Assembly (NCBI GenBank): GCA_002269645.1
Contig: NIVC01004901.1
Coordinates: 1 to 31,953 of the forward strand
Origin: Macrostomum lignano
Lineage: Eukaryota
Reading direction: 5' to 3'
Length of the DNA: 31,953 nt
A program made the position numbers and the translations under genes. The notes below the pieces were generated by a model. That model was given only the letters and a program-made list of their open reading frames with translations. It searched no databases and was not told where the DNA came from. This document shows, piece by piece, positions 10,201 through 13,200 of this stretch (positions within the stretch are counted from its first letter, which is position 1; the number at the start of each line of letters is the position of its first letter).

Positions 10201-13200
10201 GCCTGTCTAACATGAGACACACTGCCTGTCTAACATGAGACACACTGCCTGTCTAACATGAGACACACTGCCTGTCTAACATGAGACACACTGCCTGTCT
10301 AACATGAGACACACTGCCTGTCTAACATGTGACACACTGCCTGTCTAACATGAGACACACTGCCTGTCTAACATGAGACACACTGCCTGTCTAACATGAG
10401 ACACACTGCCTGTCTAACATGAGACACACTGCCTGTCTAACATGAGACACACTGCCTGTCTAACATGAGACACACTGCCTGTCTAACATGAGACACACTG
10501 CCTGTCTAACATGAGACACACTGCCTGTCTAACATGAGACACACTGCCTGTCTAACATGAGACACACTGCCTGTCTAACATGAGACACACTGCCTGTCTA
10601 ACATGAGACACACTGCCTGTCTAACATGAGACACACTGCCTGTCTAACATGTGACACACTGCCTGTCTAACATGAGACACACTGCCTGTCTAACATGAGA
10701 CACACTGCCTGTCTAACATGAGACACACTGCCTGTCTAACACACACTGTCTAACATGAGACACACTGCCTGTCTAACATGAGACACACTGCCTGTCTAAC
10801 ATGTGACACACTGCCTGTCTAACATGAGACACACTGCCTGTCTAGCATTGTGCTGATTGCAGTTACCACAAACCAAAGCGATCGAAAGGCAAAGAAAATC
10901 GTATATAGTTCATGCAAGTGCCATAATATAATTCAAATAAGAATATTTCTGTTGATAAATAAGGCGGGTAAAAATCAGAAATGATTTACATTTTATGCAC
11001 AGTATTCACGCGGCTTTCAAAACAGAAAATTGGCAAGATGCGTAAAGAGGCATGCGTAAGAGTTCTTAGAAACTTACCATCACAAGCAACACATAGTCCT
11101 TGATTTAATTTTTTTTAAATGAAAAAGATAGTAGTAGCGATAGCGATTAACAATGCTGATTTTCATATTACTGAATTCTTATTGTTCTTTTAATATTTAG
11201 TGATGATTCATAGTCATAGTTATAGACTGCCTTATTAAGTGTATAATATAATAATCACTTAATTGCTAATGACTAATTGCACATTAAAACTCTGGTAAAT
11301 TTCAACAAAAAACCGATATGCAGTTTTGGCATTCAAATTATTCGATTCGATTTAAACACTTTTTCAACCTGTAGAAAATAATTTGTTGAAAAGAAGTTGT
11401 AGCCTAGTGGGGAGGTTGTAGCCTAGTGGGGGTTGTAGCCTAGTGGGGGTTGTAGCCTAGTGGGGAGGTTGTAGCCTAGTGGGGGTTGTAGCCTAGTGGG
11501 GAGGTTGTAGCCTAGTGGGGGTTGTAGCCTAGTGGGGAGGTTGTAGCCTAGTGGGGGTTGTAGCCTAGTGGGGGTTGTAGCCTAGTGGGGAGGTTGTAGC
11601 CTAGTGGGGGTTGTAGCCTAGTGGGGGGTTGTAGCCTAGTGGGGAGGTTGTAGCCTAGTGGGGGTTGTAGCCTAGTGGGGAGGTTGTAGCCTAGTGGGGA
11701 GGTTGTAGCCTAGTGGGGGTTGTAGCCTAGTGGGGAGGTTGTAGCCTAGTGGGGAGGTTGTAGCCTAGTGGGGGATTGTAGCCTAGTGGGGGTTGTAGCC
11801 TAGTGGGGAGGTTGTAGCCTAGTGGGGGTTGTAGCCTAGTGGGGGTTGTAGCCTAGTGGGGGATTGTAGCCTAGTGGGGGTTGTAGCCTAGTGGGGAGGT
11901 TGTAGCCTAGTGGGGGGTTGTAGCCTAGTGGGGGTTGTAGCCTAGTGGGGAGGTTGTAGCCTAGTGGGGAGGGTTGTAGCCTAGTGGGGGGTTTTACCCT
12001 AGTGGGGGATTGCCTAGTGGGGAGGTTGTAGCCTAGTGGGGGATTGTAGCCTAGTGGGGGGTTGTAGCCTAGTGGGGAGGTTGTAGCCTAGTGGGGGGTT
12101 GCAGCCTAGTGGGGGATTGTAGCCTAGTGGGGGGTTGTAGCCTAGTGGGGGGTTGTAGCCTAGTGGGGTTGTAGCCTAGTGGGGGTTGTAGCCTAGTGGG
12201 GGGTTGTAGCCTAGTGGGGAGGTTGTAGCCTAGTGGGTAGGTTGTAGCCTAGTGGGGGGTTGTAGCCTAGTGGGGAGGTTGTAGCCTAGTGGGGGGTTGT
12301 AGCCTAGTGGGGAGGTTGTAGCCTAGTGGGGGGTTGTAGCCTAGTGGGGGGTTGTAGCCTAGTGGGGGGTTGTAGCCTAGTGGGGGTTGTATCCTAGTGG
12401 GGGGGTTGTAGCCTAGTGGGGGTTGTAGCCTAGTGGGGGGTTGTAGCCTAGTGGGGGTTGTATCCTAGTGGGGGTTGTAGCCTAGTGGGGGATTGTAGCC
12501 TAGTGGGGGGTTGTAGCCTAGTGGGGTATTGTAGCCTAGTGGGGGGTTGTAGCCTAGTGGGGGTTGTAGCCTAGTGGGGGGTTGTAGCCTAGTGGGGGTT
12601 GTATCCTAGTGGGGGGTTGTAGCCTAGTGGGGGTTGTAGCCTAGTGGGGGTTGTGGTCTAGTGGTTAGAGCATCGGGCTCATGACTGAAAGGTCAGGGGT
12701 TCGATTCCCGATCCAACTGGAATAATTTGTGCCCTTGAGCAAGACACATATCTGCATTGCTTCAGTTCACCCAGCTGTAAAATGGGTGCCAGCATTAGCT
12801 GGGGTAATTGAGGGTGTGTGTGCGGACCCCCCTCCAGTCTTTGGACTGAACAGCCATACGCAGCCTTCAGATGCAACGCGCAATAGCTGCGGCTGAGCTG
12901 TCGGTTGCACATTTGACCATTAGGGCAGGTGTAATCAAGTATTACTATGATATTATTGTTGATATTATTATGATATTATGATATGATAACAGAAATAAAA
13001 GTGCTATGGCGATAGATCTATGCATCTATGCATCATTTGGGACGATGAGTTATTCCATGTATATTAATATATTAAGAGAACAAGTGTACGCATAGGTCGC
13101 TCGAACAGTCTGTGGAATTCTGCTAGGGAAGTATTTTTCTTCTAAAAGCAGCGGAGAACTCGCTTTGCAAGCTCGAAAGAGTTGCACTATAAAAAATTAA

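What the first reader, a model, noticed from the sequence alone, without database searches (positions are those of the whole stretch)
11395..12790. A ~1.25-kb tandem array of RNA polymerase III A-boxes amplified from the head of a SINE
Seen: the unit GTTGTAGCCTAGTGGGG(G/AG), roughly 65-70 copies by estimate, contains TAGCCTAGTGG. It runs straight into GGGGGTTGTGGTCTAGTGGTTAGAGC...GGTTCGATTCCC, the tRNA-like head of a SINE. Established: TRGYNNARYGG is the type-2 Pol III A box bound by TFIIIC, and both versions fit it. Inference: the first ~18 nt of the element were tandemly amplified, placing dozens of A boxes upstream of a single B box inside a Pol II intron, antisense to the host. This could give staggered Pol III starts, a TFIIIC/insulator platform, or an example of a satellite being born from a SINE promoter. 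G4-6 runs every ~18 bp also make it a strong G-quadruplex candidate.
Basis: partly seen in the sequence, partly recalled or inferred. Interest (0 to 1): 0.78.

Follow-up and report, generated by a model that had tools for sequence, protein, structure and literature searches.

The report
Minisatellite grown from a SINE's head
A 1.27-kb run of about 70 copies of a 17-19-base unit in a flatworm (Macrostomum lignano) intron is a minisatellite that grew out of the first bases of the MIR-like SINE next to it: a tidy example of a known process, with no sign that the repeated promoter half-sites do anything.

Summary
TRF finds an array at 11396-12664 with period 18 and 70.8 copies. It runs in register into a SINE head at 12651-12664, matching 13 of 15 bases (chance about 1e-6). 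The window is contig NIVC01004901.1 of Macrostomum lignano. The element has an A box, one B box and a CORE domain 74% identical to MIR, so it is a CORE-type SINE, although no tRNA finder calls its head. The same array plus SINE lies in three more contigs of the assembly, with 61-70 units. Its flanks are 99.9-100% identical, so it is a length-variable minisatellite that predates these copies. It lies in a putative 10.7-kb intron of a Patj/MPDZ-like gene, antisense. That intron is 53% tandem repeats, and published figures put tandem repeats at 13% of this genome. The functional reading is weak. TFIIIC is anchored by the B box, and only three A boxes lie within the 30-67 bp A-to-B range. No canonical G4 motif exists, because the loops are 12-15 nt. 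Whether other copies of the SINE family carry the array could not be tested, because no flatworm genome database was available. Verdict: a SINE-derived minisatellite, a new member of a known kind, of low to moderate interest.

The parts
11396..12650 (+). Minisatellite of 70 units: TTGTAGCCTAGTGG plus a G-rich spacer (GGG, GGGG or GGAGG). 64 units carry the exact A-box-like TAGCCTAGTGG.
   Evidence: TRF; unit parsing; pattern count
12651..12664 (+). SINE head, which is the terminal, non-homogenised 'unit' TTGTGGTCTAGTGG. The SINE's own A box is at 12654-12664. It differs from the array units by two transitions (A>G, C>T).
12647..12720 (+). Degenerate tRNA-related region of the SINE. The start is uncertain: it is 12647 if the G run is native. 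The A box is at 12654-12664 and the B box GGTTCGATTCC at 12698-12708, with a 33-bp gap between them.
   Evidence: Not called as a tRNA by ARAGORN or Rfam. The minimum-energy fold is not a cloverleaf.
12728..12786 (+). CORE domain of the SINE, 46/62 (74%) identical to the MIR core.
12787..12990 (+). 3' body and AT-rich simple-repeat tail of the SINE. The tail repeat is at 12940-12979. The 3' end is approximate, and the partner LINE was not identified.
13134..13138 (+). First run of four or more T downstream of the SINE. It is the nearest possible Pol III stop, about 490 nt from the head. A TTTT at 11992-11995 lies inside one variant array unit.
13692..13928 (-). Host exon: first half of a PDZ domain of a Patj/MPDZ-like gene, ending ...GDRILA followed by GTGAGG.
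   Evidence: Pfam PDZ; tblastn; splice context
13265..13375 (-). Host exon: second half of that PDZ domain (VCGQDLTHATHDEAVNLIRNAPSPVEFCIQSLLNPSC), with an AG acceptor and a GTAAGT donor. The putative 10.7-kb intron that holds the array starts just after it.
2444..2605 (-). Next host exon found: first half of a further PDZ domain. Its second half is at 1570-1749.
   Evidence: tblastn; translation

Best explanation
A CORE-type (MIR-like) SINE inserted, antisense, into an intron of a Patj/MPDZ-like gene of Macrostomum lignano. Its first 14-18 bases, the stretch that holds the A box, were then duplicated in place. The most likely route is slippage between the GG that ends the A box and the G run at the element's 5' end. 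The duplicate expanded by further slippage or unequal exchange to about 70 units, and these were homogenised among themselves. The SINE's own head, sitting at the edge of the array, escaped homogenisation. The array is a neutral, length-variable minisatellite in a genome that makes such arrays everywhere. The A-box sequences are there by descent, not for function. Shown: the array, its in-register junction with the head, the SINE's CORE homology, presence with variable unit number in four contigs, and the intronic antisense position by homology. Inferred: the slippage mechanism, the order of events and neutrality.
For: The array and junction are. The head matches the unit at 13/15 in register, P about 9e-7. 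No array units lie 3' of the SINE, so the array grew from the head and was not split by an insertion. SINE identity rests on the A box, the single B box and CORE homology to MIR: score 51 against 17.4 +/- 2.0 in shuffles. The same array plus SINE lies in L001 (61 units), L002 (about 70) and L003 (cut by the contig end). The SINE and 1.5 kb of flank are 99.9% identical across copies. The 25 units nearest the SINE keep their order in all copies, while the far half differs by unit gain, loss and type, as expected for a mutating minisatellite. Window and L002 show 0-1 substitutions per 0.5-2 kb segment compared across about 12 kb, yet differ in the arrangement of array units. Context: 22 merged tandem-repeat arrays cover 38% of the contig, and 10 of them cover 53% of the putative intron. 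Tandem repeats make up 13% of this genome and SINEs 0.39% (PMC5730564 supplement). The architecture, tandem units with a terminal unit running on into the rest of the SINE, is the one described for SINE-derived satellites (PMC10702118).
Against: No second copy of the SINE family could be examined. It is therefore untested whether the array is specific to this locus, or what the family's 5' end looks like. All 70 units carry A..C (TAGCC) where the resident head has G..T (TGGTC), with no intermediate units, so two changes must be placed on one lineage or the other. The leftmost unit starts flank-G-TTG without the G run that simple GG-microhomology slippage of a full-length head predicts (note 3). 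No clear target-site duplication was found: only a 7-bp TTGTTGA shared between the flanks. Some unit-level differences between contigs could be PacBio consensus errors in G runs.
Confidence: 0.75

Rival explanations
1. The array is a family trait. Copies of this SINE are born with several heads, for example because the reverse transcriptase jumps back on the template at the RNA's 5' end and adds non-templated G. Alternatively, a master copy with a 5' array is transcribed from upstream units and passes the array on, as with the tandem promoter monomers of mouse L1 or the hexamer repeat of SVA.
For: The 3-5-nt G-rich spacer between units is absent from the left flank and from the SINE downstream of the A box. 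That would fit filler or non-templated addition. Apart from one TTTT at 11992, the array has no T run that would stop Pol III. PMC3389668 suggests that the start of some TE-derived repeats is tied to retrotransposition.
Against: Internal Pol III promoters start about 10 bp upstream of the A box in use, so a 1.25-kb upstream array would not be copied into progeny. Only three A boxes lie within the normal range of the B box. Unit number and order differ between near-identical contigs, which shows growth and shrinkage in place. No other family copy was available to test this.
Confidence: 0.1
2. The array is functional. It would act as a TFIIIC, condensin or insulator platform, or as a set of staggered Pol III start sites feeding the single B box. 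Alternatively, it would be a G-quadruplex element that affects transcription of the host intron.
For: 65 A-box matches lie on one strand. The SINE's own A box and the last two of the array lie 33, 50 and 67 bp from the B box, inside the 30-67 bp range seen in human tRNA genes (PMC11811891). The G-rich strand is the template strand of the host gene. The G4Hunter score is 1.2 or more in 42% of 25-nt windows.
Against: [quoted passage not shown] There is one B box in the whole window. The tRNA-like head is degenerate. There is no G4 motif with loops of 7 nt or less, and the loops are 12-15 nt. Neighbouring arrays of unrelated sequence are equally large. Unit number is not conserved between copies.
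Confidence: 0.04
3. An unrelated 18-bp minisatellite was already there and the SINE landed at its edge. On this reading the likeness of unit and head is chance, or comes from microhomology-guided joining.
For: The window holds other G-rich 17-bp arrays, at 2958-3447 and 8908-9405.
Against: An in-register match of 13/15 has P about 9e-7. The unit is a perfect A box, TRGCNNAGTGG, with tRNA-like spacing to the G run. There are no units on the 3' side of the SINE.
Confidence: 0.02
4. The array is an assembly artefact of long-read sequencing.
For: Mlig_3_7 is a PacBio assembly of a highly redundant genome (PMC5730564). G-run lengths are prone to error. One contig (L003) ends inside the array.
Against: The array was assembled independently in four contigs, with the same flanks and the same order of the 25 units nearest the SINE.
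Confidence: 0.02

Closest known systems
SINE-derived satellites (sSats) of squamate reptiles (Vassetzky, Kosushkin and Ryskov 2023, PMC10702118)
   Same: Both are tandem repeats made from a portion of a tRNA-related SINE. In both, a longer terminal unit continues into the rest of the SINE up to its end. In both, units are homogenised within the array and unit number varies.
   Different: No sSat unit lengths were retrieved here; this unit is only 17-19 bp, covering the 5'-terminal stretch with the A box. sSats occur at many loci, often subtelomeric, whereas only one locus is seen here and the rest of the genome was not searched. The host is a flatworm and the SINE is of CORE type.
Alu-derived and other TE-derived minisatellites in human (Jurka and Gentles 2006, as cited in Ahmed and Liang 2012, PMC3389668)
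   Same: A short segment of a SINE is duplicated in place and then slowly expanded. Short direct repeats flanking the unit are one route. That paper also describes a class with a partial copy repeated at the 5' end of a full-length element.
   Different: Most human cases have 2-3 units, against 70 here. The unit here is shorter than the 88.6-bp average partial Alu of that class.
Pol III-type tRNA-related satellites of amphibians (PolIII/TAN of newt, OAX/satellite 1 of Xenopus, Rana/polIII), as reviewed in PMC10702118
   Same: These are also tandem arrays that carry tRNA-like promoter sequence.
   Different: Their units are 200-360 bp or longer, hold a whole tRNA-like region, and at least PolIII/TAN is transcribed in vitro. 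Here each unit holds only the A box and the B box is not repeated.
Tandem 5' promoter monomers of mouse L1 and the 5' hexamer array of SVA (from my own knowledge, not checked here)
   Same: A tandem array sits at the 5' end of a retroposon and is built from, or next to, its promoter.
   Different: Those arrays belong to the transposing unit and are found in all family copies. Here that is untested and, for an internal Pol III promoter, unlikely.
CORE-SINE superfamily (MIR and others; Gilbert and Labuda 1999; PMC4824008)
   Same: The resident element has a tRNA-related head and a roughly 60-bp CORE domain that is 74% identical to MIR. This lies within or above the 66-70% reported between members.
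   Different: Copy number, partner LINE and consensus in M. lignano were not determined. The head is too degenerate to be called as a tRNA.

Membership tests
SINE-derived tandem repeat / minisatellite | Units are homologous to a portion of a SINE. | tested here: met
   The unit matches the resident head at 13/15 in register, P about 9e-7. The unit is an A-box match.
SINE-derived tandem repeat / minisatellite | A terminal unit continues into the remainder of the SINE. | tested here: met
   The array runs into TTGTGGTCTAGTGG-TTAGAGC..., then the B box, CORE domain and tail.
SINE-derived tandem repeat / minisatellite | The source SINE is a dispersed multi-copy family in the same genome. | not testable with these tools
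   There is one copy in about 45 kb of distinct M. lignano DNA. No eukaryote genome collection was available. A translated-SINE protein search and two metagenome scans were empty.
Minisatellite | A 10-100-bp unit in head-to-tail order, with unit-number variation between alleles or copies. | tested here: met
   Period 18, 70.8 copies. 61, about 70 and 70 units in three full-length copies, with different unit order in the distal half.
CORE-SINE superfamily | A Pol III A box and B box in a tRNA-related head. | tested here: met
   TGGTCTAGTGG at 12654-12664 and GGTTCGATTCC at 12698-12708, 33 bp apart.
CORE-SINE superfamily | A central CORE domain of about 65 bp (45 bp in all members), with 66-70% identity between members (PMC4824008). 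| tested here: met
   46/62 (74%) identity to the MIR core. Score 42 against 16.6 +/- 2.4 in shuffles.
CORE-SINE superfamily | A LINE-derived 3' region and a simple-repeat tail. | tested here: inconclusive
   An AT-rich simple-repeat tail lies at 12940-12979. No partner LINE was available for comparison.
tRNA gene or pseudogene | A cloverleaf that scores with tRNA finders. | tested here: not met
   ARAGORN finds 0 genes and only spurious calls at 80% thresholds. Rfam gives no tRNA hit even at E<=10. The minimum-energy fold is not a cloverleaf.
Type-2 Pol III promoter repeated in each unit (as in amphibian Pol III satellites) | Each unit holds both an A box and a B box. | tested here: not met
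   There is one B-box match in the whole window, outside the array.
Canonical G-quadruplex motif | Four runs of G3 or more, with loops of 1-7 nt. | tested here: not met
   There are 0 motifs with loops of 7 nt or less. Loop lengths are 12 (43 times), 15 (18 times) and 13 (5 times).
G4Hunter candidate | A score of 1.2-1.5 or more in 25-nt windows. | tested here: inconclusive
   The mean score is 1.10. 42% of windows reach 1.2 and 19% reach 1.5.

The most novel reading that the evidence does not exclude
The multi-head array is not a local accident but a product of retrotransposition. On this reading the reverse transcriptase re-copies the first 14-18 nt of the SINE RNA, with non-templated G between copies. 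Several members of this flatworm CORE-SINE family would then carry 5' A-box arrays, and the arrays nearest the B box would give alternative Pol III start sites. That would be a Pol III counterpart of the tandem 5' promoter monomers of mouse L1.
Probability: 0.07. Interest if true: 0.6.

Novelty: new member of a known kind. Interest (0 to 1): 0.25.

Why it matters
This is a clean, datable snapshot of how a tandem repeat is seeded from a transposable element. The founder sequence, the SINE's own head, is still attached at the edge of the array. Four near-identical copies of the locus show the array changing while its flanks stay fixed. It also documents a MIR-like CORE-SINE in a free-living flatworm. 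Finally, it illustrates why 13% of the M. lignano genome is tandem repeats. It does not open a new question about Pol III or TFIIIC, because A boxes without B boxes are not expected to recruit the machinery.

Tried and rejected
(1) tRNA detection: ARAGORN at default and relaxed settings, Rfam at gathering score and at E<=10, and RNA folding. The head is not a recognisable tRNA. The only Rfam near-hit is a chance match on the opposite strand.

(2) Other copies of the SINE: blastn with word size 9 against the window and L001-L004 found only the same locus. A protein-database search with the open minus-strand frame of the SINE found nothing. Exact-pattern scans of JGI metagenome contigs for a two-unit pattern and for a 26-nt SINE pattern both gave 0 hits. 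Cluster look-ups of M. lignano Patj paralogues gave UniProt-only entries without contigs, so no further flatworm DNA could be fetched.

(3) Target-site duplication: only a 7-bp TTGTTGA is shared between the flanks, and it is not adjacent to the element's ends. A loose GAAA(T)A(G/A)AAGT match seen by eye is not convincing.

(4) A larger mobile element around the region: the only inverted repeats are two 8-bp microsatellite arrays. A self-comparison of the window shows no dispersed repeats.

(5) Hairpin potential of the array as single-stranded DNA: it is weaker than in shuffles.

(6) The bacterial promoter and terminator scan is irrelevant for a eukaryote.

Full report
**What is there.** The window holds a head-to-tail array at 11396-12664 with period 18, 70.8 copies, 91% matches and consensus GTTGTAGCCTAGTGGGGG. 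Cutting it into units gives 70 array units plus one terminal, different unit. Each unit is TTGTAGCCTAGTGG followed by a G-rich spacer: GGG in 24 units, GGAGG in 16 and GGGG in 14, with a few rarer variants. The A-box pattern TRGYNNARYGG occurs 65 times here and 3 times in the rest of the window, against 3.6 +/- 1.9 in shuffles. The array units also fit the strict TRGCNNAGTGG consensus. The last unit is TTGTGGTCTAGTGG and runs straight on into TTAGAGCATCGGGCTC...GGTTCGATTCC. The only B-box match in 32 kb is at 12698-12708. Head and unit agree at 13 of 15 positions in register, P about 9e-7.

**Whose genome.** An ankyrin-repeat ORF at 20466-23348 is 97% identical to a Macrostomum lignano protein. 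The window itself is the complete contig NIVC01004901.1 of assembly GCA_002269645.1, Mlig_3_7. Published figures for this assembly are 13.1% tandem repeats, 0.39% SINEs and heavy redundancy: 180 Mb lies in duplicated blocks at least 95% identical, because the sequenced line carries extra chromosomes (PMC5730564). The window fits that picture. Twenty-two merged tandem-repeat arrays of unrelated sequence cover 38% of it.

**Is the neighbour a SINE?**
- Neither ARAGORN nor Rfam calls a tRNA, even at E<=10, and the fold is not a cloverleaf. The head is a degenerate tRNA relic.
- The element aligns to the MIR consensus from the A box through the B box and across the CORE domain.
- The full-length score is 51 against 17.4 +/- 2.0 for shuffles. 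For the body alone it is 42 against 16.6 +/- 2.4, with 46/62 identical positions. Members of the CORE-SINE superfamily share 66-70% identity over this domain (PMC4824008).
- An AT-rich simple-repeat tail follows at 12940-12979.
- I therefore accept it as a CORE-type SINE of about 345 bp.
- I could not examine a second copy. There is none in the window or in the four related loci. A protein-level search with its open frame and two metagenome scans were empty. No flatworm genome collection was available.

**Position.** Minus-strand ORFs carry PDZ domains, and their best relatives are Patj/MPDZ proteins. tblastn with M. lignano and other Patj/MPDZ proteins places exons at 25674-25414, 18570-17820, 16703-16635, 14931-14764, 13928-13689, 13378-13274, 2605-2444 and 1749-1570. 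The exon at 13375-13265 completes the PDZ domain begun at 13928-13692 and has AG and GTAAGT splice signals. The next PDZ domain begins near 2605. This rests on homology and not on transcripts. Small exons in between cannot be excluded. Ten arrays fill 53% of this intron.

**History.**
- The same locus occurs in three more contigs of the assembly: L001 with 61 units, L002 with about 70, and L003, which is cut inside the array by the contig end.
- The SINE and 1.5 kb of flank are 99.9% identical across these copies.
- The 25 units nearest the SINE keep the same order in all copies. The far half differs in unit number and type.
- Window and L002 show 0-1 substitutions per 0.5-2 kb segment compared across about 12 kb, yet their arrays differ in arrangement. 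The array therefore predates these copies and changes faster than its flanks.
- Part of the unit-level difference may be long-read consensus error in G runs.

**How it arose (inferred).**
- No units lie 3' of the SINE, and the SINE's own head is the last unit. So the array grew out of the head and was not split by an insertion.
- With four G, the stretch GGGGTTG lies exactly 7 nt before T8 of the A box, which is the geometry of a tRNA acceptor strand. The unit then equals SINE positions 1 to about 17.
- On that reading, the junction between units is a GG shared by the end of the A box and the start of the element. This is the short-direct-repeat route described for Alu-derived minisatellites (cited in PMC3389668).
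- Later slippage or unequal exchange expanded and homogenised the units. Edge units typically escape homogenisation, which would explain why the resident head differs by two transitions, with no intermediates.

**Two details remain unexplained (note 3).**
- The leftmost unit begins flank-G-TTG without the G run.
- It is unknown whether TAGCC or TGGTC is the ancestral state.
Both need the family consensus.

**Function.**
- TFIIIC is anchored by high-affinity binding to the B box. It then scans for low-affinity A boxes 30-67 bp away (PMC11811891).
- Here the gaps from the A boxes to the single B box are 33, 50 and 67 bp, and then 102, 120, 137 bp and upward. At most three of the 65 A boxes are in the normal range. 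A few staggered starts are conceivable. A TFIIIC platform along 1.25 kb is not supported.
- On the plus strand the first T run after the SINE is at 13134, and one TTTT lies inside the array at 11992.
- The G-quadruplex claim is overstated. No motif has loops of 7 nt or less, the loops are 12-15 nt, and the mean G4Hunter score is 1.10. Of the 25-nt windows, 42% reach 1.2.
- As single-stranded DNA the array folds less well than shuffles.

**Comparison and verdict.**
- Tandem repeats made from part of a SINE, with a terminal unit that runs on into the SINE, are described in squamates (PMC10702118).
- In human, 23% of minisatellites derive from transposable elements. These include a class with a partial Alu repeated at the 5' end of a full Alu (PMC3389668).
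- This case differs in its very short unit (the 5'-terminal stretch with the A box), its high unit number, its host and its SINE superfamily.
- It is a new member of a known kind, in a genome where minisatellites are the rule.
- The most novel reading still open is that multi-head arrays are a family trait produced during retrotransposition. I give it about 7%. One genome-wide BLAST would settle it.

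Noticed in passing
window 15300-15800 (minisatellite GCTAAAGCCCCTGGT at 15398-15770); L001, L003, L004: The five contigs fall into two groups. Window and L002 are 99.0-100% identical throughout. L001, L003 and L004 differ from them by 2-6% downstream of about 15.8 kb but are 99.9-100% identical upstream of 15.3 kb, which includes the SINE. The switch coincides with a 15-bp minisatellite, suggesting a recombination or gene-conversion boundary there.
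   Followed up: partly
window 19429-23348 (+): An intronless ankyrin-repeat gene (1289 aa in L001 and L002) is nested, on the opposite strand, in an intron of the Patj/MPDZ-like gene. In the window it is split into two overlapping frames (19429-20517 and 20466-23348). The window has 2 gap positions in its alignment to L002 in this stretch, and the annotated product is only 724 aa. This is either a frameshift or an assembly error.
   Followed up: partly
window 8112-8676 and 13496-13661: (CATCCTGA)n and its reverse complement (TCAGGATG)n form inverted arms (up to 181 nt, 80-87% complementary) about 4.9 kb apart. They bracket three minisatellites and the SINE. The second arm sits in the small intron between the two halves of a PDZ domain. 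No other inverted similarity was found.
   Followed up: partly
window 2958-3447 and 8908-9405: Two 17-bp G-rich minisatellites with similar consensus (TTGTGTCAGATTGGAGG and TTGGGTGTCAGTTGGGG), each about 29 copies, lie in the same intron. They match the SINE-head unit at only about 10/17, so they are probably unrelated to it.
   Followed up: no
window 1818-2431: A perfect (ACTA)153 microsatellite, 614 bp with 100% matches, lies in the intron between two PDZ half-exons.
   Followed up: no
window 25732-26580: A 33-bp minisatellite of 25.7 copies at 97% identity abuts the Patj-like exon at 25674-25414. It stays open in several reading frames, giving spurious ORFs of 280-419 aa.
   Followed up: no
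window 12647-12990: The element is a MIR-like CORE-SINE in a free-living flatworm. The papers I read list CORE-SINEs from vertebrates, lancelet, octopus and bivalves (PMC4824008). I did not find one described for Platyhelminthes, but I did not search Repbase or Dfam.
   Followed up: partly
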